Source: Macrostomum lignano (lineage: Eukaryota). From it: a stretch of DNA of 45,805 bases. Shown piece by piece: positions 22,379 to 44,851 of the stretch (within the stretch, counting starts at the first letter, position 1; every line of letters starts with the position of its first letter). The notes below the pieces were generated by a model that was given only the letters and a program-made list of their open reading frames with translations, did not search any database and was not told the origin of the DNA. The stretch covers positions 1 to 45,805 of the forward strand of contig NIVC01001627.1 of the NCBI GenBank assembly GCA_002269645.1. The letters run 5' to 3'. A program made the position numbers and the translations under genes.

Positions 22379-25300
22379 TTATTGATTTTCCTGCTGCATC
22401 TGCTGTAAAATGCTCATCACTTCCTCCAACTTTTTGTCCATTCCTTTTACCCGATCCTCCAGTCTGTCTATTTTCTCGTTGTCCTCTCTCTGAGCAACGA
22501 GCACATCCTGCCGCAAGTCCTTGACCTGGTTCTCAACGTGCGCCTTGAGCACATCGATGTCTCCTTTGTTCCGCTCCACAGGCCACTGCAGCCGGAGCCG
22601 GTGGTCTCGCAGCTGCTCAGCCTGGTAGATCAGGAAGCGCTTGAAGTCCTTGGGGTAGCCGCTGAAGTCCTCTTTGTGCTGCCACCACGGCTGGAACGGA
22701 AAAGTGTCTTATCTGATGTCACTGTATATTGACGAAAAACGAACAAAAAGTGTCTGAAAAATGATTTTGGAATTGAAAGTAACGAAGCACTCCGTCCTGA
22801 TCAGTTAAGCATGAAATATTTGTCAGCCTAAAGCATAATATAACATAAAATTGGAACGCTGCTCGGTAAAAGCTGCTTACCTCAGAATCTTCATCACGAT
22901 CAACTGGGGAATATCCTGGCTGGCTGGCACTGGCTGGCCTGGCTGGCTGGCCTGGCTGGCACCGACAAGCGTGGCATCTTTGCACCAGCTTCCAGGCGTA
23001 GTGCGGGAACGACAGCGGCGGCGGAACTGGACTGACCTCTGCGAACTCCCGCAGCAGCTCGAACAGATTCCTGCGCCACAGAACCTCCGCCCTGCTGGCC
23101 AACTCCGTCACGGTGCGGCTGAACAACGCGATCAGCAGGTTCCACATCACTATGGTGACCAGAAGGAGGTACACGAACACCAGAATTCCGTTGTAAGCCT
23201 TATTTCCAGCTTCATCCGCACAGGACTCTCCAGTCGCGAGACTGCTGGAGCTGCACGATTCGAACTGTGCGCTCTCCACCATTCCGAAGGCCAGCGACAC
23301 GGGCACCGTGAAAATCTTCGTCAGAGCCTGAGCATTTCTTGAGTCTGAGAAGGCCGGAAACAGCAGGTTGAAGAAGAAGATGCCGAATGAGTACACCAGA
23401 ACCAGCAAGACCAGCATGAATGGCACCAGGTCGCTGAACAGCAAGCTCTTTAGCATATTGATCTTCGGTCCGGTGACCTTGAAGTAGCTGAGCAGGGCCA
23501 CGGAGCGGAAGCCCAGAAACAGGAATGAGACGCTGAGCACAACCTGGCAGCTGCGCAGGAGGCTGGGGTCGCTCAGGTGGCCGAGCAGCTTCAGGACCAG
23601 ACCTGCCCACATCAGCAGCAGCCCAGCCATGTCAAAGTAGTTGAAAAGGTCAGTGAAGTAGCGTGGAATTCTTATGTCAAGCCCGAGTATTGTCAAGTCC
23701 TTCAGAGAAATACTGTTAATAAGTTGATTGACTTCCTGCAGCGTAAAGGACAGTGCGTACAAAAGCAGGATGATGTCTGGCACTGGAGATTGTTGAGTCC
23801 GACTGAAGTCCGTCACGTACCAGGCAAAGTAGAGCAGGAAGACCAGGAAGAAGATGGAGTAGATGATGAATCGCTGTTGGATTGTCACTTTTGCTGGAAT
23901 GTTGCAGGTGCAACAACGTTGAGGTCTGCTCCAGGACAACGGTGGATGCCTTACCCAATGCTGCTCCACCAAATTGCTGATGCACTCAGTTGCGAACAAG
24001 TCGTCGCAGTCCAGAGTCTCGACAAGGTCCATGACTGATTTGAACTTTTGAGACGCTGTATCATTTTCGGAAGAAAGTTTCCGTGCTTCGTTGCCCCTTT
24101 TCTGTTGAGTCTTGTCATTGTCCGCATGCGAGCTTTCCGGTCGCAAGAGCGATGCAAGTGGTGCCAAAAACCTCGGCCCAGCACTGCGCTGGTCTTCCGA
24201 GAGACGAAACGAACCAGTCAGGTAGGTGAACAGAAGTTCTCGCGTGTCTTTATCAGCATTTGCGTAAAGGTGGTCCAGAATGTTGATAATGATGTTATAA
24301 GCTTGAAGTTGCACTCTCTGAAGAATCTCACTCTTATCGATTTTCGGCTTTAGGTAAGTGAGCAGCCTTAGGGTCTGGGGGATGATGTCGAATTGAGGCA
24401 ACAACATGAGGTCAGTGAGAAGCCTTGGCTTCTCGAGCAGCACAGCGTATTCCATCAGCACAAGAGATTTCGAATTTCCGTCTTGTACTGAAAAATATTG
24501 CTCCAGAGTAGTCATAATCGGAGACTTAGCATTCGGCTGCTTTTCGCTGATCTGTGCCAAAATATGCTTAGAAAACTGGACATCAATCTCATCATTGACA
24601 AGGCCCAAACCGATCAGGCTGCGCAGCATTTCAGTTGAGTCAAGCTCGAAGGCCTTGAACAGCATCTGTACTTCAGGAGACTCTTCTGTCTTCGACATGC
24701 TGTCAACATCGTGCTCAGTCTTTTTATCATTTTTCTTTCTGCCTTCTTGAGAGTTTCTTGGTGCAGAAGTTCTATCAATCTGAATGCTGGCCTTAAGTGA
24801 GGAGTCAGTAAATTTAGTCAGGTGATTCCGTGCGCTCTGCTTGTCAGGAAGTTTCAGTGCCTTCTTTGCTACATCCACTAACTTGAGCAGTTCTCTGAGG
24901 CTGAAGCCCTTCTCCACAGGAATTTTTTCAATTTCATTTGCTACCTCAATGAGAACTTCGAGTTTCCCCTTGTTGCAAGCGAAATCGACGCATGTCTGCC
25001 CAGCTGCCGTCTCATCCTGCAGTTTCGCACCATTTTGAAGAAGGTATTCGATGTTCTCTTTGTGGCCAGACTTGCAAGCAAAGTGGAGACACGTTGCTCC
25101 TTTAAGAGGACCGTCGGAGACACGAAGGGCTAAAAGTTTTTCAGAACTGAGACCACAGAGATTTCCTAATTCTTGTGCAATTATTTGAAGGTCGTATGTG
25201 GAACAAAAAACGTGAGCAACGTGCAGACCCTCCGAGTTTCTTTGAAGGCTTTTGAAATCTATTGACGATCTCCTCAGAGCATTTAAAACGTCTTTTAAGT

Positions 25301-28217
25301 GAAATTCATTTGCTTCTGATGAGAACAGACAGTTGTGATTCCTCTTGTTTTCGGCTGCACGATCAACACCGTGATCTAAAAGCAGTTCGATGCGATCGGT
25401 GAGCATTTCCAGTTTATCTGATGTCCGAAATTCATTCAGTTTTCCGAACAGTGCATGCAGCATAGTATTGCCATCTAAGTCAGTTTCACGCATATCTACC
25501 AGATCTTTTTTGTCCACCTTTTTGTGCTGCTCAAGCAGCCATCGTAAAACATCCGAAAACGTGCTGTTAAAGACGGAAACGAAAAACTGGGTTTGCTGCA
25601 AATCATTGGCGACTGTCAAGCAGTCTCTCCATGAAAGATTCTGAATCAGATCAGAGATGGTCGGCACGTTTTGGCAACAAAAAGCGTAATGAATGGGAGT
25701 GTTTCCATCATCATCTCTGGAAAGGAACTGCTGCTTATTTTTAACTTCGGAAGCGAGCCACGTTAGCGGTGAAGGATCCCAACTGTTTTCAGCTGCTACA
25801 TGCAAAATTGTTCGGTTTCTGGGGCCTTTGGCCAAAATGCACTTTTGCAAATCGAGTTCTGTTGCCATTGCCTGAAGAGTGTCTAACTTTTGGCATTTAA
25901 AAGCAACGTGCACGGCACTCTCTCCATCGTCATCTAGATCGAAGAATCGTTTCTTGTCCCCAACTTCGAAAACAAGCCAGAGAAGCACTGACGGATCCTC
26001 ACTGTTTTCTGCTGCGGCGTGCAAAATTGTGCGATTTCTACGGCTTTTCACAGCAACGCAGTTTTGTAAACCGAGTTCCTCTGCCAATTTCTGAAGAGTG
26101 TCCAATTTTTGGCAATTGAAAGCAACATAAACGGCGCTCTTCTCGTCCTCATCTGGATCGAAGAATCGCTGCTTGTCTTCCACTTCTGAAAGAAGCCCCA
26201 GCAGCACTGATGGATCCTCATGTTCTTGAGCTGCAGAGTGCAAAATTGTTCTCTTTTTGGGGCCTGTAACAGAAATAAACTTCTGCAAACCGAGTTTCGT
26301 TGCCAATTTATTAAGAGTCTCCAAGTCTTGGCATTTAAAAGCAACATACACGGCACTTTTCCCATTCTCGTTTGGATCGAAGAATCGCTGCTTGTCTTCA
26401 ATTTCAGAAACAAGCCACAGTAGCACTGACGGATCCTCACTGTTTTCTGCTGCGGCGTGCAAAATTGTTTGTTTTCTACGGCTTTTCACAGCAAAGCAGT
26501 TTTGTAAACCGAGTTCCTCTGCTAATTTCTGAAGAGTGTCGAATTCTTGGCATTTAAAAGCAACATACACGGCACTTTTCCCATCCTCGTCTGGATCGAA
26601 GAATCGCTGCTTGTCTTCCACTTCTGAAAGAAGCCACAGCAGCACTGATGGATCCTCATGTTCTTGAGCTGCAGAGTGCAACATTGTTCTCTTTTTGGGG
26701 CCTGAAACAGAAATAAACTTCTGCAAACCGAGTTTTGTTGCCAATGTCCGAAGGGTCTCCAAGTGTTGGTCTCTGAGAGCAACATACACGGCACTCTCTC
26801 CATCATCGTCTGGATTGAAGAATCGCTGCTTGTCTTTAACTTCGGAAGCGAGCCAAAGAAGCACTGACGGATTGTAAATGTTGTGAGCTGCTTCATGCAA
26901 AAGTGTTCGGTTTTTGGGGCCTTTAATGCTAAGGCATTTTTTAAAATCCAGGTTTGAAACCAACGTTTGAAGAGTGTCCAATTTATGATGTTTGAAAGCA
27001 ACGTACACCGCACTCTCTCCATCATTGTCCAGATCGAAAAATCGCTGCTTGTCTTCAAGTGCACAAACAAGCCAAAGAAATGCCGACGGATTCTCGCTGT
27101 TTTTAGCTGCGGAGTGCAAAATCGTTCGATTTCTCGAGCCTTTGGCAGAAAGGCAGTTTTGCAAATCGAGTTCCTTTGCTAATGTCTGAAATGTCTTCAA
27201 GTCTTGATTTTCAAATGCAGCATACACGACAGTTTCTCCATCCTCGTCTGGATTGAAGAATCGCTGCTTGTCTTCCACTTCGGAAACGAGCCACAAAAGC
27301 ACTGACGGATTCTCACTGTTTTCAGCTGCCGCATGCAAAATTGTCCGACTTCTGGAACCTTTGGCGGAAACGCAGCTTTGCAAACCGAGCTCTGTTGTCA
27401 ATGCCTGAAGAGTGTCCAACTCTTGGTAATTGAAAGCAACATACACGGCACTTTTTCCATCCTCGTCTGGATCGAAGAATAGCTGCTTGTATTTAACTTC
27501 AGAAGCGAGCCACAGGAGCACTGAAGGATTTTTATTGTTTTTCGCTGAAATGTGTAAAATCTGCCGACCTCGGCATCTGACGGAAAGGCAGCTGTTCAAA
27601 CTGAGCTTTATTGCTAATTTCTTAAGAGTCTCCAAGTCTTGATATTTGAATGCAACATGCACGACACTCTTTCCATCATTGTATTGAATGAAGAACTGCC
27701 ATTTGCCTTCTATTTTGGAAGCAAGCCAGCGAAGCAAATCTGGGTTTTTGCTGTTATGAGCAGAAATGTGCACAGGTGTTTTCATATCAGCATTCAGCTT
27801 TTTGACCAGCTGTTGTCCACATTTGTCCCAAATAATTTGCAGTGCCTGGACTGTCGAATCTGTCTGCTTGCAGCAGCAGGCAAAGTGAAGCATGTTGTTG
27901 AATTTATCGCTTCTCAGTCTGAGGCACAGATCAGGAAGTCTGTCTGTCAATACTTTTAACAGCTGGATATCGGACGTGACAGCTGCCAAAAACAGCAGTG
28001 CCTTCACTTGTATATCATTCTGTATATCATTCTGATCCTCAATGCACGTTTTTAGTGTCCTTGCTATTCTGTTCTGCTCTTCAATGTCGTCATTCTTGCA
28101 AGCTTGGCGCAACTCCTTGTGCCATTCTCTGCACTGGCTGTCTGCGTCGCTCCAGATGGATTTAAAAACGAATTCATGCAGTCCAAACTGGCTTAAGTCG
28201 AAGTCCTCTTCATCCAT
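22379..28217 (-). CDS. Ankyrin-array TRPM-like cation channel, paralog A; exons 28217-22881 and 22690-22379, ~1882 aa (a further 5' exon is possible)
   Basis: Ten 73-aa di-ankyrin units, further ANK repeats (GATCLHFACKSGH), then six TM segments with YFTDLFNYFD (S3), FRSVALLSYFKVTGPKINML (S4-S5), PVSLAFGMV...C...C (pore), LLVTIVMWNLLIALFSRT (S6) and WRRNLFELLREF...PVPPPLS (TRP domain). Donor GAG|GTAAGC at 22880 and acceptor TTCCAG| at 22691 (phase 0) lead to PWWQH...-coiled coil-stop. The frame stays open upstream to an acceptor at 28288. Confidence 0.9.
25660..27785 (-). repeat. Coding tandem array of 10 x ~219-bp (73-aa) di-ankyrin units in paralog A
   Basis: Recurrent RTILHAAAENSEDPSVLLWL.SEVEDKQRFFDPDEDG.SAVYVAF..Q..DTLQ.L..EL.L..C.S.KG. 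Confidence 0.92.
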
Positions 28218-29389: not shown

Positions 29390-29580
29390 CGGCCTTCTGA
29401 ACTGCTGCGCGAGCGGCGACACTTCGACTGGCTGGCCACGTCATGTGGTCGAAAGCTGCGGCGGGGAGCCGCTGAATTGACGTGCTGCTGCTTCCAGCGG
29501 CAGGGACCGCGTAGGCAAGGCCAAGGGCGAACGGCTCGCTACATTGACAGATTCATAAAGGAGGACGCTAGCGCCCATGA
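29390..29580 (+). mobile_element. RTE-like non-LTR retrotransposon 3' remnant
   Basis: Frameshifted ELLRERR.LRLAGHVM...DVLLL...R..GQGR...YID, resembling the post-RT C-terminus of RTE-clade elements. Confidence 0.5.
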
Positions 29581-31835
29581 CCACGCGGGTGGGTGTGAAT
29601 TTTTTATGGACCCGGACCCATCTGACTCCTCCCCCCTTCTGGCCACTTTGTGTGGTCGGTGGGAAGGGTTCTTAGTTGTTATTGTTGAACACATGATTGT
29701 TTGAACTGAGTACTACGGCTTATAGCCTACGAGTACAACAAGGCTACAAGGCTTCTTGATGACCTTTGCGACTTTCACAACAGGGGCTGCTACGACTTTC
29801 ATAGCCGAAAGGGATGTGAAGCTCTCACAGTCCACTGGCACGAGAGCTTATGCCCCGTGCTTCGAACTGATGATAAAACGTTTCTCATACCTCAAACTCG
29901 CTACTCTTAGTAGCAGATCGTTCCCCAGTCACTCGGTCTCATTCTCTCGGCCAGGCTACAATAGTGCTTTTCACCAAATTCTTACCTCTGCGAGGCAAAG
30001 AGTCTAAATTTACGAGTAGGAGTAGGCAGAGAGAGAACAATCGAGCATAAACAAAAGCTTTGTCGACTAAAGTGAGAATTAAGTTTTAACAGAAAGTGGA
30101 ATTATGCACAGTCGCAGTCGCAGCAAAATCTGAGGCTGACTCTCGTCTTCTTCCTAGTCTATCTCTTTCTACATTAATTTAAACACTACTGCAAGACCTA
30201 GAGTCATGGATCAATGCTAATGAGAATGACAATCAACAAGATCGGATATCGTACATGTACTACGTCTCTCGTACATGTATACATGTAAATAGAAACCCCC
30301 CATCAGCGAGACAGCTGATTCAAACCCTCAGTTACACCCGGGCAGTTTTCAGCCCAGTTTCACGGACAGTTTCATCTTTAAATTGCATTGCTTGCTTGCT
30401 TGAAAAAGAGGTTTTTTATTAATGGAAATCTTTGTCGAAGTTTAATTATCAGATCCAAGATCGCTAGAAAAATGACGTTGAGCCCCACACTACACCACTA
30501 CTTAGCAATGTGGCCGACTTCTCCTGGAAACCAATGCTGTCTGCCAGGAAATTAGAAGCAAGGTCACACTCTGTCACTAAAGAAACCGCAGCGATCTTGA
30601 CAAGCACAAGTCAAACCGCCGAGCAAATTTCCAGCTTGGTGATCCACATAAGCTTTGAAGAAAATTAATGCGGCGGTGGGTGGCAGATGCTATTTTTCTA
30701 TTGGATAAGAGAAGGAAAAGGTTTCTGATAATTCCTTTCACGACTTGATGAATTGTCCGTGTTATCAGAATATTTAAGCTCTAATTCAATATTTTGCTCA
30801 ACGTGAACTCAGGTCTTTCTTTTTTGCCTTCTCGAATCCAAAATAATTTTCTGCTAAAACTTCGTATAGTCTGCTTAGTTTCATTTGAATTACTTTTAAT
30901 CTTGTGTGAAATTATTAACTCTTCTTGAAATGAATTGCAAAGAATTTGGTCATACCTCACCTTGTCGTCAATTGGTTTCAGGACAATTTCCCGAATAGTT
31001 TGCTCCATTTTTACTATAGAAAATTTTACAAGTGCTTATTCGATTACTTTAGAAAGGACATTGACGTCCTCACTCAGGCCACAAGGTAACCTGCGAAATT
31101 ATATGATGGTATATGAAATTCTCCAGGATATTTTCCCGCGGAGAAAATAGGGGGAACCCTCGAGATTGCACTTTGGATGTCAATTGAATTGCCAAAGAAA
31201 ATATTTTTTCTAAAAGCCATTTTTACTGTGATATTTTGGTAAAATATTTGTTCCAGCTAATCTCCATTTCCTTCTCCGGAATGTAATTCATTCTCATGTC
31301 TATATATTCTGCTTGGGAAATTCAGACAATAACATTGACAAAACGAGCACCGCTTACTGCGGCATATTATCAATCCAAAGATGGTAAACGTGTATTTTCA
31401 ATCCAAAGTTGTTTTTAGCATACTACTTACATAAGTAGTATGGTTGTCTATAGCTTCTATTGTTTTCTTGAGAAACCAGCAATGAACGTCAATCGTTTCG
31501 AGTCTTTTCATATTGGCGAATAATGTTTGATTAAACAGACCTCCGATCTTCCTACTGCTTCCTTTGGCTTTCCTAACTGCCTCGTAAGAACGACGCCTAA
31601 GCTCTTTTTCAGACGGCATGGTTTGGTGTTGGAATAGAAAATTGTTCCCTTGTGAAAAATGATAGGAAGCTTCTTATTATATAAAATTTGGAGGTCTCCC
31701 ATTAGATGCCAGATTTTCTGCCAAAGTTCCGCAAAAATTTCGCCAAAAATTCCGTCAAAAATTTTGCCAAAAAATGCTGGTTTTGGCGGCCTATTGGGAT
31801 TAAAGAGATAAGGCCTCTTTCTGAGAATAATAGAG

Positions 31836-32577
31836 AAGCTGCAGGGAAGTTCCCCTTTTTCGAGAACAATAGAAACTGCGGGGAAGTTCCCCTTTTCCGT
31901 GAACAATAGACTCTTGAGAGTACTCAGTACTGAGAGGAGAAAGGAATGGTTGTAATTAGCGACTAGATGGGTAAGAGATTTTGAGTACTGTTGAATCCAC
32001 GTATAGGCAACGTAGTTTCCCTTTTCTGAGTACAATAGAAACTGCGGGGAAGTTCCCCTTTTCCGAGAACAATATAGACTCTTGAGAGTACTCAGTACTG
32101 AGAGGAGAAAGGAATGGTTGTAATTAGCGACTAGATGGGTAAGAGATTTTGAGTACTGTTGAATCCACGTATAGGCAACGTAGTTTCCCTTTTCTGAGTA
32201 CAATAGAAACTGCGGGGAAGTTCCCCTTTTCCGAGAACAATATAGACTCTTGAGAGTACTCAGTACTGAGAGGAGAAAGGAATGGTTGTAATTAGCGACT
32301 AGATGGGTAAGAGATTTTGAGTACTGTTGAATCCACGTATAGGCAACGTAGTTTCCCTTTTCTGAGTACAATAGAAACTGCGGGGAAGTTCCCCTTTTCC
32401 GAGAACAATATAGACTCTTGAGAGTACTCAGTACTGAGAGGAGAAAGGAATGGTTGTAATTAGCGACTAGATGGGTAAGAGATTTTGAGTACTGTTGAAT
32501 CCACGTATAGGCAACGTAGTTCCCCTTTTCTGAGTACAATAGAAACTGCGGGGAAGTTCCTCTTTTCCGAGAACAAT
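31836..32577. repeat. 168-bp tandem repeat (4 full units plus partials)
   Basis: Units start at 31870, 32036, 32204, 32372 and 32540 and are essentially identical. This explains the 56-aa periodic ORF 31508..32539. Confidence 0.95.
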
Positions 32578-33387
32578 GGAGACTGTATGTGGGCTTTCAG
32601 TAACAATGGAAGGTATGAAGCTCTGACTTAGTCAGCCTCCTCTTGAGAACACTCGTAATTACTATTATTCTCTTCTGAATCTACACTTGTAGCGTATTCA
32701 CTATAAAATAAAATTCACGTTTGAATGAGTTTTACAAAATCCTGGAAACGTTTTACTCATTTTCGATTACTTGAATTAAATGAATTTTACAAAATCATTT
32801 TTTTTCTTTTTTTCCTATCACTTTTTAAAAAGGGCATTGCCCTCACCCTTACCCTCCGAAAAAAGTTAAGCTCCAATCATTAAAAATTACAGTTTAAAAA
32901 AGAATAATTTGTAGTAGTTGTAGGTACTCGTATTATATTGGATGGATATCAAGTGAAGAATGAACGAATGAAAGAACGAGCGAAGCGAGTGAATGATGAA
33001 CGCCTCGACGAAGTCGAGTGTACGGCCACCCAATATAATACCTACAACTACTCTCGCCTTCTGAAGCTTCTGAAACTGAAGCTTTGAAGAAACAGCTCAC
33101 AAAACTACACAAAAGGGAATAAAACGAGGCAAGGATGGAACAATAGGAATCATTGAGCAAGGAAAAAACAAAAGAGAAACTCGCATTCACTCACCGCACA
33201 GTTGGCGCAAATAGGCGCTAAGGAGAGAAGATACCAAAAAATTGCACCAAAAAACCAGTTGAGCTTGATGTGAGTAGCCTCTAATTGTTGGCTTATATCT
33301 GAGCAAACTAAACTGAGTAACCAACTAAAACAAGGTCTCATTTAAATAGCGGCAGTTTTTACGGTGGGAGTGCTTATTGTCACGGTA

Positions 33388-33563: not shown

Positions 33564-34464
33564 TACATTTTAAATTTAATTTTTTAAAATCAAATAAATA
33601 TAGAAAACGGTAAGCTGCTGTTGAGTCTTTGGAGTGCTCTGCTGTAGTGGAAAAATATAGCTTATGCACTTGTGAATTTAGGAAGTATAGAAGTGTATTT
33701 GGCTTTTAATATTTATTGATAACAAAGGCATGGATCCACGTCCCATTGTCAACTGCCATTTCTTCAACAAGGAATTAGGGCACTTGAAGCAAATGGTCGG
33801 TTCCTCCACTAACTAGTGTACCTCATGTTTATGAAAAAGTTATCTGCATATTGTATTCTATAACTTTTATACACATTCGTAATTTTGTGTACACGTACAT
33901 GACTGAAACTGACAAGAAAGCTCCACAGTGCATGTACATAGAGTGCATACACAGTATGCTACATAAAAATTCACGTAACATTTTTTAAACAGGTAAAATA
34001 GCGATTTTTACATTTTTTTACAGAATTAAAAAAAATTAATTTTTACATAAAATTTACATAAAATTTTTACAGAATTAACAAAAAAATTTTTTACACTTAT
34101 TTTTGCAGAACGCAGCACCAGACAGTGGGCGGAGTTATGCTGCCACAAAGATTCAGCATGTACGGTAAATGTTGCAGAGTCTGCGTCTGCGCCAGATGAA
34201 GACAGCAACAAGACAAAAACACGATGACGTATCTGTCGGCTAACGAAAAGCAGCGGCGACCGCCAGCAGCGTTAGACAGTCTTTGTTCAGTGCTCTCAGA
34301 AATGCGTCGTCGTCAAGGAGCAATTGCGACGGCGCTTGCAGCAGCGGCAGCGCCAGCAGAGCGGAGAGCTGCGCTAATGGGCCTGTTGTTGCCAAACTTG
34401 CTTGCTGCCAAAGAGGCAGCAAGAAACTTTGGAGAAACAACAAAGACCAGCTGCTGCTGTTGTT

Positions 34465-35201
34465 TCTTCTTCTTCACATTCCAGACGCGGCCGATCCGGC
34501 GGTGCTGATAGGGCCGGGGGCTAGATGCGCCCCATCCTGCGCAAGCAATTCGAGAAGGGCCGCCGAGTTCCCCATCAGGTCTTCGGTCGGCGTGCCGCTG
34601 TGAGCTCTCCATGCGTCCCCGCGTGGGCATTGGTAGATCAGGTGTTCGACGGTGTCCTCCATGCCGCATTCGGGCAGAGGGGGGACGCGTCGAGCCCCAT
34701 GCGGTGACGGGTGCTGCCGTTGATCATACTGGCCCCCGCTCGGAGCTGGTTAATTAGCACCTGCTCATGTCTCGTCAGGTCCTTCGGTGGGGGCCAGGCC
34801 GGGCCCGTGACTGCGGCGTCAAGGGCTCGCCTGCAGCGGCAGTTGGCCGCCTTGACGGCGCTTAGTTGGATGGGCGTCCGGTTTTGGTCCAGGGTGGCAG
34901 CGCAGTTGGCCACCTGGTCCGCTGCTTCGTTGCCCGACATGCCACAGTGGGCTGGCACCCAGATGAATTTGACTCTAGTTGACTCAGAGGTCGAGTAGGC
35001 AGTCCCAACACTCAGCAGCGACGCTGTCGGTTTGGTTGAGCGGGCCGGCGCTCAGGGCCGTGATGGCACTAAGGCTGTCAGTTCTGGGTAGTTGCGACGG
35101 TTTGTCGACGGACTTTCCGGGTGTCCATCGTCCCGGGGGCCCCGCGGGGAGGGGGTCGCTTGCCACGAGGGGGTGATGGCGATCACGTACCGTGGTGTCC
35201 G
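34465..35201 (-). mobile_element. 737-bp 5'-truncated non-LTR retrotransposon with RNase H and a CCHC knuckle (I/Ingi/R1-like group)
   Basis: TDSLSAITAL...ECWDCL, VKFIWVPAHCGMSGNEAADQVA, CP..CGMEDTVEHLIYQCP (frameshifted), a (GAA)n tail at 34465-34475, and 9-bp TSD GCTGTTGTT at 34456-34464 and 35202-35210. Confidence 0.85.
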
Positions 35202-36399
35202 GCTGTTGTTGCTGCAGCTGCTGCCGCGGCAACAGTAGCGACGCAGAAGCAGCAAGCTGAAAGAAAGCCAGAACAAAGACCCGGCCACCCCTTAGCAATC
35301 TCCGCTAGGAATCTTCGATTTCCTCCGCTTCATAAACTGCGGGATGCTCTGCTCAAAGCCCTGGAGCTGGAGCCCTAGAGACAATGGCGAACAATTAAAA
35401 ATGTCAGTGTATCGAAAAAGCGACACAGACCACAAAATCACTAAGATGCACATGCAGGTAGAATAAGTTGATAATTAGTCAGATGAAAACGTTGCTTCTG
35501 CAATAGTGCTGTAGCAGCTGGGGTCCTGTTCCAGCTGGACGAGGCACCGGTAAGACCGGAAGAGCAGGCAGTGGCCAGGCTTCATGGCGGGACCTGATCT
35601 CCTGACTGTCGCGCAGGGCGCTGTAGGAGCTGTAGGCACTGCGGACACGCGGGTGCTGTAGAATAGGGTGGGGGGCAACCACACCTCGTATGTAGTTGGC
35701 AACGAGCTCAAAGATATTCGGGGCAGTAGCAGCGAGCGTCCTGCAGGTGGGTCAACGATCGCATCGTCTCTCCGTGGCGAACGGGGCACTGGTCGGGTGG
35801 CAGCACCCTAGGGGGGCAAACCAAAATACATCAATCCCTAGACCGCCGCGTTGGCCACAGCCCCAGCTCGACCGGTTCGGTAGAGAGCACCAGCTGCTGA
35901 TGCTGCTGCTGCTACATGCGGCTGTTGCTGTTTGTTACTGTTGCTGTTGCCACTTTTTGTCCGCCAACTGTGGAATGTGGCCAAGGAGAGATTTCGACAG
36001 GATACTTTTCCTGAAGAATCCTTGGATTTTTTCTGCAGCCACTCGTAACACTCTCGGGGCTGTCGCTCTATACATGTAGTACCCTGCATGGTGTTACCAG
36101 TGCATCGATGAGCGGGTACAGCGTCAGCTCTAGCCGCTCCGATCGGTGGTTGAGTAATCGGTGCCAACCCTCAACACCTCTTTGTTGGTGCTAATAGATC
36201 GGCCGAATACTAGTTTTTTTGGTATGAAGAACCGGGTTCGAAAGCCAAGTTGAATTTACGTAAATCCAGCAGTAGCGGGACAAGTGGCAGTCTCCTTTAG
36301 GCCTCTCTCCATGCTCAGCCAGCAGCTATATGCCAATGCCGTCCGAGCAAATTTGCTGGGTGCGAGGATCCGCCCTGGCCTGTAGGACTGTTGCAAGCC

Positions 36400-36560
36400 C
36401 AGATGCTGTACACGGCGAAAAATTGCTTGTGCGTAAATGGCAAAGCAAAACTGATCAGGCTGCGCAGCATTTCACTCGAGTCAATCAAGCTCAAAGGCCC
36501 TGAAAAACCATCTAATTCGGGAGACTCTACTGTCATCGAAATACTGACAGCATCTTGCAA
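36400..36560 (-). pseudogene. Decayed fragment of a third ANK-TRPM paralog
   Basis: QDAVSISMTVESPELDGFSGPLSLIDSSEMLRSLISFAL aligns with HDVDSMSKTEESPEVQMLFKAFELDSTEMLRSLIGLGL of both channels. The DNA TGATCAGGCTGCGCAGCATTTCA...TCAAGCTCAAAGGCCCTGAA matches ~24612-24660 and ~40818-40865. Confidence 0.75.
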
Positions 36561-38630: not shown

Positions 38631-41600
38631 TTACTGCTGTCTCTGCTGTTGCATCTGCTGTAAAATGCTCATCACATTGGTCATTTGTTGCTGCAGTTTG
38701 TCCAACCTTTCATCCATTTTCTCGTTGTCTTCTCTCTGAGTAGCGAGCAAGTCCTTGACCTGGTTCTCAACGTGCGCCTTGAGCACATCGATGTCGCCTT
38801 TGTTGCGCTCCACAGGCCACTGCAGCCGGGGCCGGTGTTCTCGCAGCTGCTCAGACTGGTAGATGAGGAAGCGCTTGAAGTCCTTGGGGTAGCCGCTGAA
38901 GTCCTCGGTGTGCTGCCACCACGGCTAAAGCGGAAGAGTGTCTTATGTAAATGGAACAACAACGTCAATTAAATAATAAATATAACAAACACTAAGTGTC
39001 TAGAAATTTGAAACAAAATAACGAATCATTCCGCTCTGATGAGTTTGGCAAAATGCCTACATGAAAATAGTCTGACATATAATTGCATTTTTGGTCGGCA
39101 AAAGCTGCTCACCTTCGAACTTTCAGCACCATCAGCTGGGCTGACTTCACCGGATCGTGGCTGGCACCGACAAGCGTGGCACCTTTGCAGAAGTTTCCAG
39201 GCGTAGTGCGGGAACGACAGCGGTGGCGGAACTGGACTGACCTCCGCGAACTCCTGCAGCAGCTCGAATAGATTCCTGCGCCACAGAACCTCCGCCCTGC
39301 TGGCCAACTCCGTCACGGTGCGGCTGAACAGCGCGATCAGCAGGTTCCACATCACGATGTTCACCAGTAGGAGGTACACAAACACCAGAATTCCGTTGTA
39401 AGCCTTATTTCCAGCTTCATCCGCACAGGACTCTCCAGTCGCGAGGCTGCTGGAGCTGCACGACTCGAACTGCGCGCTCTCCACCATTCCGAAGGCCAGC
39501 GACACGGGCACCGTGAAAATCTTTGTCAGAGCCTGAGCATCTCTTGAGTCTGAGAAGGCCGGAAACAGCAGGTTGAAGAAGAAGATGCCGAATGAGTACA
39601 CCAGCACCAGCAAGACCAGCATGAATGGCACCAGGTCGCTGAACAGCAAGCTCTTTAGCATATTGATTTTCGGCCCGGTGACCTTGAAGTAGCTGAGCAG
39701 GGCCACGGAGCGGAAGCCGAGAAACAGGAATGAGACGCTGAGCACAACCTGGCAGCTTCGCAGGAGGCTGGGGTCGCTCAAGTGGCCGAGCAGCTTCAGG
39801 ACCAGACCTGCCCACATCAGCAGCAGTCCAGCCATGTCAAAGTAGTTGAACAGGTCAATGAAGTAGCGTGGAATTCTCATGTCACGCCCGAGTATTGTCA
39901 AGTCCTTCAGAGAAATACTGTTAATAAAGTCATTCACTTCCTGCAGCGTGAAGGACAGTGCGTACAACAGCAGGATGATGTCTGGCACTGGAGATTGTTG
40001 AGTCCGACTGAAGTCCGTCACGTACCAGGCAAAGTAGAGCAGGAAGACCAGGAAGAAGATGGAGTAGATGATGAATCGCTGTTGAATTGTGACTTTTGCT
40101 GAAATGTTGCAGGTGCAACAGCGTTGAGGTCTGCTCCAGGACAACGGTGGATGCCTCTTCCAATGCTGCTCCACCAAATTGCTGATGCACTCAGTTGCGA
40201 ACAAGTCGTCGCAGTCCAGAGTCTCTACAAGGTCCATGACTGATTTGAACTTTTGAGACGCTGTATCATTTTCGGAAGAAAGTTTCCGTGCTTCGTTGCT
40301 CCTTTTCTGTTGAGGCTTGTCATTGTCCGCATGGGAGCTTTCCCGTCGCAGGAGTGATGAATGAGGTGCCAAAAACCTCGGCCCAGCATTGCGCTGGTCT
40401 TCCGAAACACGAAACGAACCAGTCAGGTAGGTGAACAGAAGTTCTCGCGTGTCTTCATCAGCATTTGCGTAAAGGTGGTCCAGAATGTTGATAATGGTGT
40501 TATAAGCTTGAAGTTGCACTCTCTGAAGAATCTCACTCTTATCGACTTTCGTCTTTAGGTAAGTGAGCAGTCTCAGGGTCTGAGGAATGATGTCGAATTG
40601 AGGCAACAACATGAGGTCAGTGAGAAGCTTTGGCTTCTCGAGCAGCACAGCGTATTCCATCAGCACAAGAGCTTTCGAATTTCCGTCTTGTACTGAAAAA
40701 TATTGCAACAAAGTAGTCATAATCGGAGACTTAGCATTCGGCTGCTTTTTGCTGATCTGTGCCAAAATATGCTTAGAAAACTGGTCATAAATCTCATCAT
40801 TGACAAGGCCCAAACCGATCAGGCTGCGCAGCATTTCAGTTGAGTCAAGCTCGAAGGCCCTGAACAGCATCTGTACTTCAGGAGACTCTTCTGTCTTCGA
40901 CATGCGTTCAACATCGTGCTCAGTCTTTTTATCATTTTTCTTTCTGCCTTCTTGTGCATCTTTCGGTGTAGAAGTTCTATCCTTCTGAATGCTGGCCTTA
41001 AGCGAGGAGTCATTAAATTTAGTCAGGTGATTCCGTGCGCTCTGCTTGTCAGGAAGTTTCAGTGCCTTTTTTGCTACATCCACTAACGTGAGCAGTTCCC
41101 TGAGGCTGAAGGACTTCTCTGTCGGAAATTTATTGATATCATTTGCTACCTCAATGAGAACTTCGAGTTTCCCCTTGTTGTAAGCGAAATCGACGCATGT
41201 TTGCCCAGCTGCCGTCTCATCCTGCAGTTTCGCACCATTCTGAAGAAGGTATTCGATGTTCTCTTTGTGACCAGATTCGCAAGCAAAGTGAAGACACGTT
41301 GCTCCTTTTAGAGGACCGTCGGAGACACGAACAGCTAAAAATTTTTCGGAACTGAGATCACAGAGATTTCCTAATTCTTGAACAATTTCTTTTAGGTCGA
41401 ATCTTGAACAAAAAACATGAACTACGTGCAGACCCTCCGAGTTTCGTTGAAGGTTTTTCAAAATTGCTGTAACCGGAGATTTCTTAAGAGCATTCAAAAC
41501 TTTGGCTAAATGAAATTCATACGCTTCTGAAGCAAACAGACAGTTTTGTTTCGATTCGTTTTCGGCTGCAGGATCAACACCCCGATCGACAAGCAATTTT

Positions 41601-44600
41601 ACGCGATCGATGAGCATTTCCAGTTCATCTGAAGTCCAAAAGTAATTCAAATTTCTGAACAGTGCATGCAACATATTGTTGCCTTTCAAGTCAGTTTCAT
41701 GCATATCTACCAGATCTTCTTGGCCCACCATTTTGACCTGCTCAAGCAGCCATCGGAAAACATCCGGAAATGTGCAGTTCATGACGGAATGGTAGAACTG
41801 GGTTTGCTGCAAATCATTGGCGACAGTCAAGCAGTCTCTCCATGAAAGTTTCTCAATCAGAACAGAGATTGTTGACAAATTTTGATAACAAAAAGCGTAA
41901 TGAAGGACAGTGCTTTCATCATCATCTCTGGAGAGGAGCTGCTGTGTATTTTTGACTTCGGAAGCGAGCCACATTAGCAGTGAAGGATCCCAGCTGTTTT
42001 CAGCTGCTACGTGCAAAATTGTTCGGTTTCTGGGGCCCTCAGCGGAAACGCACTTTTGCAAACCGAGTTCATTTGCCAATGCCTGAAGAGTGTCAAATTC
42101 TTGGCATTTAAAAGCAACATACACGGCGCTTTTTCCATCGTTTGTATCAAAGAATCGCTGCTTGTCTTCGATTTCAGAAACAAGCCACAGCAGCACTGAC
42201 GGATTTTCACTGTTTTTTGCTGCGGCGTGCAAAATTGTCCGACATTTGGAACCCTTAGAAGAAACACATTTTTGCAAAGTGAGCTCCGCGGCCAATGCCT
42301 GTAGAGTGTCTATTTCTTGGTAATTGAAAGCAACATACAAGGCACTTTTTCCATCCTTGTCAGGGTCGAAGAATCGCTGCTTGTCTTCTACTTCAGAAGC
42401 GAGCCACAGTAGCACTGACGGATTATATCTGTTTTCAGCTGCGACATGCAAAATTGAGCGATTCCAGGCGCTTTTCAAAGAAAAGCATTTTTTCAAATCG
42501 AGCTTAGTTGCCAGCGTACGGTTAGTGTCCAAGTTTTGACAATTGAAAGCAACGTGCACGGCACTCTCTCCATCTTCGTCTGGATCGAAGAATTGTCTCT
42601 TATTTTTAACTTCAGAAGCGACCCACAATAGCACTGATGGATTAGATCCATTTTCAGCTGCGGCGTGCAAAATCGTCCGACATCTGGGACCCTTGGATAA
42701 AATGCACTTTTGTAGACTGAGCTTCGTTACCAATGCCTGCAGAGTGCCCGAGTTTTGGTATCTGAAAGCAACGTGCACGGGACACTCTCCATCTTCGTCT
42801 GGATCGAATAATCGCTGCTTGTCTTCTATTTCGGAAACAAGCCACAGAAGCACTGACGGATCCTCACTGTTCTCAGCTGCGGCGTGCAAAATTGTGCGAT
42901 TTCTTGGGTTTTTAAAGGAAACACACTTACGCAAATCGAGTTCTATAGCCAGTTCCTGAAGAGCGTCCGAGTTTTGGCAACTGAAAGCAACATACACGGC
43001 ACTCTCTCCATCTTCGTCTGGATCGAAGAATTGCTGCTTGCCTTCAACTTCGGAAACGAGCCACAATAGCACTGACGGATCAGATCCATTTTCAGATGCG
43101 GCATGCAAGATTGTCCGACGCATGGGACCCTTGGCGGAAAGGCATTTTTTCAAGCCAAGCTCCGTTGCCAATTCCTGAAGAGTGTCCGAGTTTTGGCATC
43201 TGAAAGCAACGTGAATGGCGCTCTCTCTATCCTCGTCTGGATCGAAGAATCGCTGCTTGTCTTCCACTTCGGAAACGAGCCACAGAAGCACTGACGGATC
43301 CTCACTGTTTTCAGCTGCGGCGTGCAAAATTGTGCGATTTCTTGGACCTTTAGAGGAAACGCACTTTAGCAAATTGAGTTCTATAGCCATTTCCTGAAGA
43401 GTGTCTGAGTTTTGGCATCTGAAAGCAACATGGACAGCACTCTCTCCATCCTCGTCGGGATCAAAGAATCGCTGGTTGTTTTTAATTTCAGAAGCGACCC
43501 ACAGTAGCACTGACGGGATGGACCCGTTTTCAGCTGCGGCGTGCAAAAGTGTCCGACATCTGGGACCTTTGGAAAAAACATAGTTTTGCAAACTGAAGTC
43601 CGTTGCCAATTTCTGAAGAGTTTCCGAGTTTTGGCATCTGAAAGCAAGATGCACAGCACTCTGTCTATCCTCGTCTGGATCGAAGAATCGCTGCTTTTCT
43701 TCCAATTCGGAAACGAGCCACAGGAACACTGACGGATCCTCACTGTTTTCAGCTGCGGCGTGCAAAATTGTGCGATTTCTAGGGCCTTTCACAGAAATAC
43801 ATTTTTTCAAGCCCAGTTCCTTTGCCAACGTCTGAAGAGTGTCCAAGTTTAAGCAGCTGAAAGCAACGTGTATGGCGCTCTCTCTATCCTCGTCTGGATC
43901 GAAGAATCGCTGCTTGTCTTCCACTTCAGAAACGAGCCACAGAAGCACTGACGGGATGGATCTGTTTTCAGCTGCAGCATGCGAAATTGTTCTCCTTCTA
44001 GGACCCTTGGCGGAAACGCAGCTTTGCAAGCCGAGCTCCGTTGTCAATGCCTGAAGAGTGTCCAACTCTTGGTAATTGAAAGCAACATACACGGCACTTT
44101 TTCCATCCTCGTCTGGATCGAAGAATCGCTGCTTGTCTTCAACTTTAGCAACAAGCCACAGAAGCACTGACGGATCCTCACTGATCATTGCCGTAATGTG
44201 TAAGATCTGTCTTCCCTGGCATTTGACAGATAGGCAGTTTTTTAAACTGAGCTCCGTTGCCAATGTCTGAAGAGTCTCCAAATCTTGATATTCGAAAGCA
44301 ACATGCACGGCACTCTTTCCATCATTGTCTTTAATGAAGAACTGCTGTTTGTCTTTGACTGTAGAAGCAAGCCAACGAAGCAAATCTGGGTTTTGGCTGT
44401 TTTGAGCAGATATGTGCAAGGGTGTTCTCATCTCAGCATTCGGCTCTTTGATCAGCTGTTGTCCACATTTGTCCCAAATAATTTGCAGTGATTGGACTGC
44501 CGAGTCTGTCTGCTTGCAGCAGCAGGCAAAATGAAGAATGTTGTTGTTTTTATCACTTTTTACTCTGAGGCACAGATCAGGAAGTCTTTCTGTCAAGACT

Positions 44601-44851
44601 TTTAGCAGCTGGGTGTTGGAAGTGACTACTGTCATAAACAGCAATGCTTTCGCTTGTATATCATTCTGATCCTCAATGCACTCTTTTAATGTCTTTGCTA
44701 TTCTGTTCTGCTCTTCAATTTCGTCATTCTGGCAAGCTTTGAGCAATTCCCTGTGCCATGCTCTGCACTGGCTGTCTGCGTCGCTCCAGATGGATTCGAA
44801 ATCAAATTCATACTGTCCAAACTCGTTTAAGTCGAAGTCCTCATCATCCAT
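38631..44851 (-). CDS. Ankyrin-array TRPM-like cation channel, paralog B; exons 44851-39113 and 38924-38631, ~2010 aa
   Basis: Same architecture as paralog A, with 12 di-ankyrin units. Donor AAG|GTGAGC at 39112 and acceptor CTTTAG| at 38925 (phase 0, same position as in A). First ATG (MDDEDF) at 44851; the listed ORF start at 44935 is a GTG. Confidence 0.9.
41870..44430 (-). repeat. Coding tandem array of 12 x ~219-bp (73-aa) di-ankyrin units in paralog B
   Basis: Twelve (R/Q)T/S(I/L)LH..A.N...P..L.W motifs counted in the translation. Confidence 0.92.

What the first reader, a model, noticed from the sequence alone, without database searches (positions are those of the whole stretch)
22379..44851. 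TRPM-type channels whose N-terminus is a 20-24-repeat ankyrin array (ANK-TRPM chimera)
Seen: the pore domain carries TRPM-like signatures, namely GPKI after S4, P...FG.V pore helix/filter, a Cys pair in the post-filter loop (C-SSSSLATGES-C), N/T-I-x-x-x-NLLIA-x-F in S6, a W..N...L..EF...P.PPP TRP domain and a C-terminal coiled coil. No MHR1-4 region is recognisable; instead there are 10 or 12 di-ankyrin units plus further ANKs. Known: canonical TRPMs lack ankyrin repeats, whereas TRPA, TRPN, TRPV and TRPC have them. Inference: a lineage-specific channel subfamily built by domain shuffling. The TRP box (WRRNLF vs WKFQR) and filter (FGMV vs FGQI/FGEV) are also divergent, so gating and selectivity may be unusual.
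Basis: partly seen in the sequence, partly recalled or inferred. Interest (0 to 1): 0.82.

Follow-up and report, generated by a model that had tools for sequence, protein, structure and literature searches.

The report
Flatworm TRPM channels with ankyrin arms
Two neighbouring genes of the flatworm Macrostomum lignano encode melastatin-type (TRPM) ion channels whose usual N-terminal sensor domain is replaced by a very long ankyrin-repeat array, a design the TRPM literature says does not exist and that turns out to be shared by free-living and parasitic flatworms.

Summary
The minus strand carries two intact, tandemly duplicated two-exon genes. Gene A is 28217..22881 + 22690..22379 (1882 aa). 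Gene B is 44851..39113 + 38924..38631 (2010 aa).

Each protein has:
- 10 (A) or 12 (B) tandem 73-aa di-ankyrin units, plus flanking ankyrin repeats;
- a helical linker;
- an S1-S6 pore domain, a TRP helix with a PPP motif, and a C-terminal coiled coil.

The pore domain is clearly TRPM-type. All top PDB sequence and fold matches are TRPM. Profile-profile E is 9e-49 against TRPM, 1e-8 against TRPC5 and 8e-6 against TRPA/TRPN.

The SLOG domain (MHR1/2) is absent. However, the linker is a divergent MHR4, so "no MHR recognisable" is only partly right.

The locus is not unique. M. lignano holds more than 30 such clusters, and flukes and tapeworms hold relatives with shorter ankyrin arrays and a clear MHR4. 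All named members are flatworms.

The ankyrin-bearing groups form one clade in 80-87% of NJ bootstraps. Its position inside TRPM is unresolved.

No paper found describes this family, and reviews call TRPM/TRPS ankyrin-free. Verdict: a new variant of a known kind. Function is inferred only.

The parts
22379..28217 (-). Gene A, complete. Exon 1 is 28217..22881, the GT-AG intron is 22880..22691, and exon 2 is 22690..22379 (TAA at 22381-22379). The product is 1882 aa.
   Evidence: ORF and translation. Splice sites read from the DNA. The same acceptor and an equivalent donor occur in the database models P0001, P0005 and P0007.
25608..27797 (-). Gene A: ten tandem 73-aa di-ankyrin units (aa 141-870).
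   Evidence: Register print, TRF 219-nt period with 8.9 copies, Pfam Ank_2 E 3e-54. Units 6 and 8 are 90% identical.
24939..25607 (-). Gene A: irregular ankyrin repeats after the array (aa 871-1093). They end in the conserved pair GATCLHFAC...KGKLEVL.
   Evidence: The best Pfam Ank stretches lie at aa 1036-1090. This pair is conserved across the family.
23874..24686 (-). Gene A: helical linker (aa 1178-1448), a divergent MHR4-type domain that includes the pre-S1 helices.
   Evidence: hhalign against canonical TRPM MHR3/4 gives E 5e-6; reversed and shuffled controls give 0.07-0.98. Against the famP linker E is 5.5e-17 and against famX 1e-8. Foldseek alignments to TRPM span this region.
22998..23873 (-). 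Gene A: S1-S6 channel domain and TRP helix (aa 1449-1740). It holds the S2 E..Q and S3 N..D positions, GPK, the FGM filter, the Cys pair, NLLIALF, W-RRNLF and PPP.
   Evidence: PDB phmmer top 60 are all TRPM. hhalign E 9e-49 against TRPM. Motif table. dN/dS 0.12 against gene B.
22379..22690 (-). Gene A exon 2: rib-like helix and C-terminal coiled coil.
   Evidence: Translation. AlphaFold helices at model residues 764-785 and 792-852.
38631..44851 (-). Gene B, complete. Exon 1 is 44851..39113, the GT-AG intron is 39112..38925, and exon 2 is 38924..38631 (TAA at 38633-38631). The product is 2010 aa.
   Evidence: The database model P0004 shares exact stretches with it, including the spliced C-terminus.
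41819..44443 (-). Gene B: twelve tandem di-ankyrin units (aa 137-1011).
   Evidence: Register print, TRF 219-nt and 438-nt periods with 10.2 copies, Pfam Ank_2 E 4e-72.
41144..41818 (-). Gene B: irregular ankyrin repeats after the array (aa 1012-1236).
   Evidence: Pfam Ank stretches at aa 1183-1261.
40079..40891 (-). Gene B: MHR4-like linker (aa 1321-1591).
   Evidence: It is 93% identical to gene A's linker and belongs to the family linker profile used.
39203..40078 (-). Gene B: S1-S6 channel domain and TRP helix (aa 1592-1883).
   Evidence: It is 97% identical to gene A's. Motifs.

Best explanation
The locus holds two functional, tandemly duplicated genes of Macrostomum lignano.

Identity (shown). 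They encode subunits of a TRPM-superfamily cation channel. The SLOG/MHR1-2 nucleotide-sensing module has been replaced by an ankyrin solenoid of roughly 25-31 repeats. Ten or twelve of its units are a recently expanding 73-aa di-ankyrin tandem array. The rest of the TRPM chassis is kept: an MHR4-type linker helical domain, S1-S4, the S4-S5 GPK linker, a pore helix and filter with the TRPM pore-loop Cys pair, S6 NLLIALF, a TRP helix followed by PPP, and a C-terminal coiled coil.

The genes belong to a clade of ankyrin-bearing TRPM-like channels whose named members are all flatworms. Its less derived members, in M. lignano, flukes and tapeworms, have about 4-8 ankyrin repeats plus a clear MHR4. 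The window's subfamily is a fast-evolving Macrostomum expansion in which the array grew by unequal recombination.

Mechanism (inferred).
- The proteins assemble as tetramers through the coiled coil and form a non-selective cation pore.
- The positions that bind Ca2+ in TRPM2/4/5/8 are kept: E and Q/D in S2, N and D in S3, E in the TRP helix. Gating is therefore probably Ca2+-dependent.
- With no SLOG and no NUDT9 domain, nucleotide or ADP-ribose control is lost.
- The ankyrin arm instead couples the gate, through the linker and TRP helix, to a cytoskeletal or protein partner, acting as a tether or spring or as a docking platform.
For: Gene integrity:
- An uninterrupted ORF runs through both the ankyrin and channel parts in both paralogues.
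- The GT-AG intron is conserved.
- dN/dS is 0.12 in the transmembrane domain and 0.41-0.50 elsewhere.

TRPM identity of the pore:
- All of the top 60 PDB sequence hits are TRPM (best 1.5e-17).
- In pairwise phmmer, TRPM scores 65-86 bits, TRPC5 about 11, NOMPC below 9, and TRPA1 gives no hit.
- hhalign gives 9e-49 against TRPM, 1e-8 against TRPC5 and 8e-6 against TRPA/TRPN.
- For the AlphaFold model (pLDDT 67), the top 50 Foldseek hits are all TRPM.
- The pore-loop Cys pair occurs in 54/73 canonical TRPMs, 8/15 famM, 7/8 famP and 4/4 famX, and in none of the TRPC5 or TRPA/N sequences.

SLOG loss and ankyrin gain:
- There are no LSDAT hits.
- 22 of 26 close relatives carry ankyrin repeats and none carries SLOG.

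MHR4 kept.

One old fusion:
- The famX and famP N-termini are colinear at E 1.3e-48.
- The ankyrin groups are monophyletic in 80-87% of gamma-NJ bootstraps.

Taxonomy.

Array turnover:
- Only the end units are orthologous between A and B.
- Units A6 and A8 are 90% identical.
- The homeologous copy L006 aligns with about 500 nt less of the array.

Ca2+-site residues.
Against: - There are no functional or expression data of any kind.
- The window family's linker matches canonical MHR4 only at E 5e-6 directly; the case rests on the bridge through famP and famX.
- The trees are neighbour-joining only. The position of the ankyrin clade inside the TRPM/TRPS radiation has no support, and the first tree, rooted on TRPA/TRPN, put the ankyrin groups basal.
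- The filter (F-G-M/I/L-x-E) differs from canonical Y/F-G-E/Q, and the glycine is missing in famP, so conduction properties cannot be predicted.
- The ankyrin solenoid could not be modelled (pLDDT 41).
- Four members of the clade come from unnamed SRA/ENA assemblies, so restriction to flatworms is not proven.
Confidence: 0.8

Rival explanations
1. The family is an ancient, separate TRP family, sister to TRPM+TRPS. It would have kept the ancestral group-1 layout (ankyrin repeats + linker helical domain + channel) and never acquired SLOG. Flatworms would then be the only lineage sampled here that retains it.
For: - In the Kimura-NJ tree rooted on TRPA/TRPN, the ankyrin groups branch below all canonical TRPMs.
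- Burroughs 2015, as cited in PMC13143021, reads MHR3/4 as degenerate ankyrin repeats. An ankyrin-then-MHR4 layout could therefore be primitive.
- The position of the clade within TRPM has no bootstrap support.
Against: - All named members are flatworms, so this reading needs many independent losses.
- With gamma distances, the TRPC5 root lies next to the ankyrin clade in only 7-15% of replicates.
- famX and famP keep a TRPM-specific PF25508-type MHR4 and the TRPM Cys pair.
- These are long branches, so a basal placement is what long-branch attraction would produce.
Confidence: 0.12
2. The genes are decaying duplicates or assembly or annotation chimeras. On this reading the ankyrin gene and the channel gene are really separate, or the copies are pseudogenes.
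For: - The homeologous copy in the public assembly (L006, NIVC01001982.1) has its reading frame broken into pieces and is annotated as a 707-aa fragment.
- M. lignano carries very many paralogues.
Against: - In the window, both copies have single open frames of 1779 and 1913 codons that cross the ankyrin-channel junction.
- The same fused layout recurs in dozens of paralogues and in trematodes and cestodes.
- Transmembrane dN/dS is 0.12.
- The breaks in L006 may be errors of that assembly.
Confidence: 0.04
3. It is really a TRPN/NOMPC-, TRPA- or TRPC-type channel, all of which normally carry ankyrin repeats, whose pore merely looks TRPM-like.
For: - The ankyrin count is close to the 29 repeats I recall for NOMPC (own knowledge).
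- TRPC5 also has GP in the S4-S5 linker, N..D in S3, and PPP after the TRP box.
Against: - Pairwise scores are about 11 bits for TRPC5, below 9 for NOMPC and nothing for TRPA1, against 65-86 bits for TRPM.
- hhalign gives 1e-8 and 8e-6 against 9e-49.
- There is no TRP_2 domain.
- S6 reads NLLIALF, not NLLIGLAVGD or NMLIAMM.
- All fold matches are TRPM.
Confidence: 0.01

Closest known systems
Canonical TRPM channels (TRPM1-8, Nematostella and choanoflagellate TRPM2; Pfam LSDAT_euk + TRPM2-like + Ion_trans)
   Same: The S1-S6 fold and sequence, the GPK S4-S5 linker, the pore-loop Cys pair, S6 NLLIA-F, the TRP helix with W followed by PPP, the S2/S3 Ca2+-site positions, the MHR4-type linker (divergent here) and the C-terminal coiled coil.
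   Different: There is no SLOG/MHR1-2, no NUDT9 or kinase domain, and no PF25508 or TRPM_tetra hit at Pfam level. Instead there are about 25-31 ankyrin repeats. The TRP box is WRRNLF rather than WKFQRY, and the filter is FGM-V-E rather than Y/FG(E/Q).
Ankyrin-bearing TRPM-like proteins of other flatworms (famP and famX in this report). Examples: Opisthorchis viverrini KER32702/OON13731, Dicrocoelium CAH8570744, Fasciolopsis KAA0186122 and Schistocephalus A0A0V0J4K6 (both auto-named 'TRPM7'), and M. lignano PAA51132, PAA66045 and PAA64338.
   Same: The same overall plan of N-terminal ankyrin repeats, then MHR4, then a TRPM-type channel. They form one clade with the window genes in 80-87% of NJ bootstraps.
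   Different: They have only a handful of ankyrin repeats and a clearly recognisable MHR4 (76-134 bits against a canonical MHR HMM). They have no 73-aa tandem array. The window's subfamily is much more divergent in both linker and pore.
TRPN / NOMPC
   Same: A very long N-terminal ankyrin array on a six-helix TRP channel. The repeat number is comparable (NOMPC has 29, from my own knowledge).
   Different: The transmembrane domains are only distantly related (below 9 bits; hhalign 8e-6). NOMPC has no MHR4-type PF25508 linker and no C-terminal coiled coil of this kind. Any functional analogy as a gating spring is untested.
TRPS (soromelastatin, ced-11-like)
   Same: It is a sister family of TRPM with a related channel domain (PMC7306681).
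   Different: TRPS has SLOG and Nudix domains and no detectable ankyrin repeats. I had no labelled TRPS sequence, so a direct comparison was not made.

Membership tests
TRPM (melastatin) | The S1-S6/pore domain is closest to TRPM in sequence and fold. | tested here: met
   every top hit is TRPM. hhalign E is 9e-49, against 1e-8 for TRPC5 and 8e-6 for TRPA/N.
TRPM (melastatin) | An N-terminal SLOG/LSDAT domain (MHR1/2). | tested here: not met
   There is no PF18139 or PF18171 hit in either protein or in 26 close relatives. Canonical hits from the same search do carry it.
TRPM (melastatin) | MHR3/4 (the Pfam TRPM2-like domain, PF25508) preceding S1. | tested here: inconclusive
   There is no Pfam hit and no hit to my canonical MHR HMM. 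Profile-profile E is 5e-6 directly, and 5.5e-17 and 1e-8 to famP and famX. Those two families match canonical MHR at 6e-21 and 6e-32. So a divergent MHR4 is present, while MHR3 is not shown.
TRPM (melastatin) | A conserved Cys pair in the loop after the filter. | tested here: met
   It is present in A and B, in 54/73 canonical TRPMs, and in none of the TRPC5 or TRPA/N sequences.
TRPM (melastatin) | A TRP helix (W-K-F-Q-R type) followed by a proline-rich re-entrant segment. | tested here: met
   The W and the PPP are conserved, but the box is divergent (WRRNLF). PPP is also found in TRPC5, so it is not specific to TRPM.
TRPM (melastatin) | A C-terminal coiled coil for tetramer assembly. | tested here: inconclusive
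   AlphaFold predicts a long helix with heptad-like spacing, but there is no PF16519 hit. Oligomeric state was not tested.
TRPM (melastatin) | Absence of canonical ankyrin repeats, as stated in the literature (PMC7306681). | tested here: not met
   Ank_2 E is 3e-54 and 4e-72.
TRPN (NOMPC) | A TRPN-type channel domain (S6 NLLIGLAVGD) behind about 29 ankyrin repeats. | tested here: not met
   The ankyrin number is similar, but transmembrane similarity is negligible.
TRPA | A TRPA-type channel domain with an ankyrin array. | tested here: not met
   phmmer gives no hit to mouse TRPA1. hhalign E is 8e-6 for the pooled TRPA/TRPN profile.
TRPC | Four ankyrin repeats, a TRP_2 domain, and an EWKFAR TRP box. 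| tested here: not met
   There is no PF08344 hit. Similarity is about 11 bits to TRPC5, and hhalign E is 1e-8.
TRPS | SLOG and Nudix domains with a TRPS-type TRP domain. | not tested
   No SLOG or NUDIX domain was found. No labelled TRPS reference was available for comparing the transmembrane domain.

The most novel reading that the evidence does not exclude
Flatworms, at least some of which lack TRPN (schistosomes, PMC6287577), may have rebuilt a NOMPC-like mechanotransduction channel on a TRPM chassis. In this reading the 25-31-repeat ankyrin solenoid of the window's subfamily acts as a cytoskeleton-tethered gating spring that pulls on the MHR4 linker and TRP helix. The rapid gain and loss of 73-aa di-ankyrin units among paralogues would then tune spring length and stiffness. 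This would be an independent, convergent origin of ankyrin-spring gating. It would also define a flatworm-specific channel family present in parasitic flukes and tapeworms.
Probability: 0.15. Interest if true: 0.85.

Novelty: new variant of a known kind. Interest (0 to 1): 0.65.

Why it matters
Reviews and phylogenies of TRP channels treat TRPM and TRPS as the ankyrin-free families (PMC7306681). The most recent broad TRPM survey did not sample flatworms (PMC13143021). This family shows that the TRPM channel core can work, or at least persist under purifying selection, with an entirely different cytosolic sensor.

It offers three things:
- a natural experiment on how N-terminal modules couple to the TRPM gate;
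- a second, independent case of a very long ankyrin array on a TRP channel, to set beside NOMPC;
- a channel family, so far found only in flatworms, with members in liver flukes and tapeworms, a phylum in which another TRPM channel is already the praziquantel target.

The protein sequences are already in public databases, but only as "hypothetical" or "ANK_REP_REGION" entries, or mis-named "TRPM7".

Tried and rejected
- A home-made single-repeat ankyrin HMM missed even the window proteins and was dropped in favour of Pfam.
- To obtain outgroups I queried the protein index with remembered TRPV1/TRPA1/TRPC/NOMPC segments. The list was swamped by TRPC5 plus one mouse TRPA1 model with a duplicated exon, which I repaired by removing the duplicate. 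No TRPV sequence was obtained.
- A NOMPC-only query returned only S5-TRP fragments.
- The Kimura-distance NJ tree with TRPA/TRPN/TRPC gave saturated, unreliable rooting: TRPC5 landed inside canonical TRPM. I do not rely on its basal placement of the ankyrin groups.
- Gamma-distance NJ supports monophyly of the ankyrin clade but gives zero support for any particular sister group.
- No ML or Bayesian software was available.
- AlphaFold on the 1121-aa ankyrin region from a single sequence failed (pLDDT 41). The repeat count therefore comes from sequence register and Pfam, not from a model.
- Pfam found no coiled-coil (TRPM_tetra) or MHR domain in the window proteins.
- I considered that 'SmTRPM7' (Smp_035140) might be the schistosome member. 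It was renamed Smp_333650, which I recall as the meclonazepam target, so this lead was not supported. Whether Schistosoma or planarians have a member remains unchecked.
Full report
WHAT IS THERE

The window has two long open frames on the minus strand, 22719..28217 (1832 aa) and 39026..44935 (1969 aa). The last ~50 residues of each look like intron read-through. Reading the DNA shows a GT donor straight after ...DRDEDSE (gene A, exon ends at 22881) or ...GAESSK (gene B, exon ends at 39113). An AG acceptor lies before PWWQH..., at 22690 in A and 38924 in B. Splicing there yields proteins of 1882 and 2010 aa that end in a heptad-patterned helix. The acceptor and an equivalent donor appear in independent database models of close paralogues (P0001, P0005, P0007). 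One model of gene B (P0004) uses another donor.

The two genes lie head-to-tail about 10.4 kb apart. They are 83% identical in DNA over 5.4 kb.

ANKYRIN ARRAY

- Pfam scores Ank_2 at E 3e-54 for A and 4e-72 for B.
- Printed in a 73-residue register, A has ten units (aa 141-870) and B has twelve (aa 137-1011). Each unit holds two ankyrin-like helix pairs.
- TRF recovers the 219-nt period with 8.9 and 10.2 copies. In B it also finds a 438-nt super-period.
- Further irregular ankyrin repeats flank the array. I estimate about 25-31 repeats in total per protein. That total comes from sequence inspection, not from a model.
- Only the first two units and the last unit are orthologous between A and B (71-81% identity). 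The inner units are scrambled.
- Units 6 and 8 of A are 90% identical.
- A homeologous copy in the public M. lignano assembly aligns with about 500 nt less of the array.

The array is therefore turning over by unequal recombination.

CHANNEL DOMAIN

- A 391-aa stretch (pre-S1 to just past the TRP domain) finds only TRPM chains among the best 60 PDB sequences. The best is Nematostella TRPM2, E 1.5e-17.
- An exhaustive phmmer scan of 1.84 billion representatives gave 706 hits. Thirty-two have E<1e-30 and form a distinct family. After a gap to about 1e-22 come ordinary TRPMs.
- In pairwise scoring, canonical TRPMs reach 65-86 bits, TRPC5 about 11, NOMPC fragments below 9, and mouse TRPA1 does not hit.
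- Profile-profile comparison of the family's transmembrane domain gives E 9e-49 against canonical TRPM, 1e-8 against TRPC5 and 8e-6 against TRPA/TRPN.
- An AlphaFold model of aa 1030-1882 (pLDDT 67, pTM 0.63) matches TRPM8, TRPM3, TRPM4, TRPM5 and TRPM2 in all top 50 Foldseek hits. The alignments span 715-950 columns, so they cover linker, membrane domain and C-terminal helices.
- A motif table over 113 aligned sequences shows the following:
  - the post-filter Cys pair, GPK, S6 (x)NLLIA(L/M)F and W...PPP are shared with TRPM;
  - the Cys pair is absent from the TRPC5 and TRPA/N sequences;
  - the S3 N..D pair is invariant in the family (15/15);
  - the S2 glutamate is kept, with Q, D or E three residues later;
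  - the TRP-helix glutamate is kept.
  These S2, S3 and TRP-helix positions are the ones that coordinate Ca2+ in TRPM2/4/5/8 (established knowledge of those structures).

WHAT REPLACED WHAT

Neither protein hits SLOG/LSDAT or the TRPM2-like (MHR3/4) Pfam domain. Among 26 close relatives, 22 carry ankyrin repeats and none carries SLOG.

Of the next 37 hits, 26 carry the TRPM2-like domain, 16 carry LSDAT_euk and 11 carry ankyrin repeats.

Those ankyrin-bearing proteins that I could place, together with others found in the same search, fall into two further groups:
- famX comes from M. lignano only. Its layout is ankyrin repeats + the C-terminal half of PF25508 (28-46 bits, above the 27-bit cut-off) + Ion_trans.
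- famP comes from Opisthorchis, Dicrocoelium, Fasciolopsis, Schistocephalus and four unnamed assemblies. Its layout is ankyrin repeats + Ion_trans.

A custom HMM of canonical MHR3/4 scores famP at 76-110 bits and famX at 91-134 bits over its C-terminal half. It finds nothing in the window's own family, famM.

Profile-profile comparison closes that gap:

| Comparison | E-value |
|---|---|
| famX linker vs canonical MHR | 6e-32 |
| famP linker vs canonical MHR | 6e-21 |
| famM linker vs famP linker | 5.5e-17 |
| famM linker vs famX linker | 1e-8 |
| famM linker vs canonical MHR | 5e-6 |
| reversed or shuffled controls | 0.07-0.98 |

The aligned helices include the WAVL-type helix, the ...VLDxxY helix and the pre-S1 ...C...L...W segment.

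So the window proteins keep a strongly diverged MHR4. What was lost is MHR1/2 and much of MHR3.

ONE FUSION OR SEVERAL, AND WHERE IN THE TREE

- The whole N-terminal halves of famX and famP align colinearly, from the ankyrin repeats through MHR4, at E 1.3e-48. famM aligns to famP at 6.5e-10.
- With gamma-corrected distances and TRPC5 as outgroup, the three ankyrin groups form one split in 80-87% of NJ bootstraps.
- The TRPC5 root lies next to that clade in only 7-15% of replicates.
- No sister group among canonical TRPMs has support.
- An earlier Kimura-distance tree rooted on TRPA/TRPN put the ankyrin groups basal. In that same tree TRPC5 sat inside canonical TRPM, so its deep structure is not trustworthy.

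My reading is a single SLOG-to-ankyrin replacement early in rhabditophoran flatworms, followed by a fast-evolving expansion in Macrostomum. The alternative, an old sister family that never had SLOG, is not excluded. I give it about 0.12.

ORGANISM AND DISTRIBUTION

The closest proteins are all from Macrostomum lignano. P0004 shares exact stretches with gene B. A contig of assembly GCA_002269645.1 is syntenic with the window at 94-99% identity. From memory, that accession is the M. lignano Mlig_3_7 assembly; the tool confirmed only that it carries the M. lignano protein P0003.

All named members of the three groups are flatworms. One close relative, P0012, sits on a 5.1-kb contig binned into a Kangiellaceae MAG. 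That is probably a eukaryotic contaminant.

ARE THE GENES FUNCTIONAL

dN/dS between A and B is 0.12 in S1-TRP, 0.41 in the linker, and 0.43-0.50 in the N-terminal region (aa 1-140), the post-array ankyrin region and the C-terminus. The channel core is under clear purifying selection.

No expression or functional data were available.

HOW IT PROBABLY WORKS (INFERENCE)

- The subunits form a tetrameric cation channel assembled through the C-terminal coiled coil.
- Intracellular Ca2+ probably modulates gating at the conserved S2/S3/TRP site.
- There is no SLOG or NUDT9 domain, so nucleotide control is lost.
- The ankyrin arm acts as a tether or spring, or as a docking platform, and transmits force or binding events through the MHR4 linker and TRP helix.
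- The methionine or other hydrophobic residue after the filter glycine makes selectivity unpredictable.

KNOWN OR NEW

Himmel et al. [quoted passage not shown] The 2026 MBE survey of TRPM evolution did not sample flatworms. It mentions ankyrin repeats only as degenerate remnants in MHR3/4. The schistosome and planarian TRP papers that I read do not mention ankyrin-bearing TRPMs. One paper notes in passing "fewer ankyrin repeat domains" in its TRPM cluster, which includes flatworm sequences, without comment.

The proteins exist in databases as hypothetical or mis-named entries. I therefore rate this a new variant of a known kind: a TRPM-superfamily channel with an ankyrin N-terminus. It is of moderate to high interest to TRP specialists.

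Noticed in passing
window 10472-11665 (-): A separate 397-aa ORF made almost wholly of canonical 33-aa ankyrin repeats (Pfam Ank_2 E 4e-89). It is unrelated in repeat type to the 73-aa units of the channel genes.
   Followed up: partly
window 12066-12908 (+): A 280-aa ORF with a SAP domain (E 3e-13), probably an exon of a nuclear protein gene.
   Followed up: partly
window 2007-3044 (+) and 3494-4681 (+): GC-rich ORFs (local GC 0.58). The first has weak, below-threshold VWA hits (E 2e-3) and the second has no Pfam hit.
   Followed up: partly
window 19366-19692 (+) and 7159-7479 (-): Short ORFs that look like remnants of mobile elements. The first has a weak GIY-YIG hit (E 5e-4). The second resembles a Tc1/mariner transposase C-terminus by eye but has no Pfam hit.
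   Followed up: partly
window 31848-32584: A 168-nt tandem repeat, 4.4 copies, 98% identical, in the spacer between the two channel genes. It creates a spurious 343-aa ORF (31508-32539).
   Followed up: no
window ~34000-36200: A GC-rich block (0.56, against about 0.40 around it) with overlapping ORFs on both strands. One of them (34638-34958, -) has an RNase-H-like HCG..GNE.AD motif by eye but no Pfam hit. It may be a decayed retroelement.
   Followed up: partly
window genes A and B, per-region dS: Synonymous divergence between the paralogues is about 0.09-0.12 in the linker and transmembrane domain, but 0.24-0.33 in the N-terminal, post-array and C-terminal parts. This hints at gene conversion or mosaic history across the central and 3' part of exon 1.
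   Followed up: no
L006 (GCA_002269645.1 NIVC01001982.1, 100180-122303): This is a syntenic copy of the gene A region, 94-99% identical. It aligns with about 500 nt less of the ankyrin array. Its reading frame is split (ORFs 8160-9821 and 9737-12124) and it is annotated as a 707-aa fragment. The cause could be assembly error or a decaying homeologue.
   Followed up: partly
L001 (GCA_036350755.1 JAZBNS010000602.1, 5106 bp): A 1537-aa intronless member of the same family (43% identical in the channel part), with ankyrin repeats and a TRPM-like channel domain. It sits on a contig deposited as part of a Kangiellaceae bacterium MAG, which is most likely eukaryotic (meiofaunal flatworm?) contamination of the bin.
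   Followed up: partly
P0124 (GCA_003604175.2, gene range 124 kb): A canonical TRPM2-like model (SLOG + TRPM2-like + NUDT9_N) that also shows an N-terminal Ank_2 hit (33 bits). This could be a fused gene model or another, independent ankyrin addition to a TRPM.
   Followed up: no
P0004 versus window gene B: A database model of gene B (or an allele of it) joins exon 2 to an earlier donor (...LLQEFAE|PWWQ), which skips the PPP segment. It also carries an N-terminal extension from the in-frame upstream ORF. This could be alternative splicing or a prediction artefact.
   Followed up: partly
window 7902-9224 (-) and 9557-9877 (-): Two ORFs (440 and 106 aa) that may be exons of one gene. The upstream one has a GS..G...D.D pattern reminiscent of nucleotidyltransferases by eye, but neither has a Pfam hit.
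   Followed up: partly
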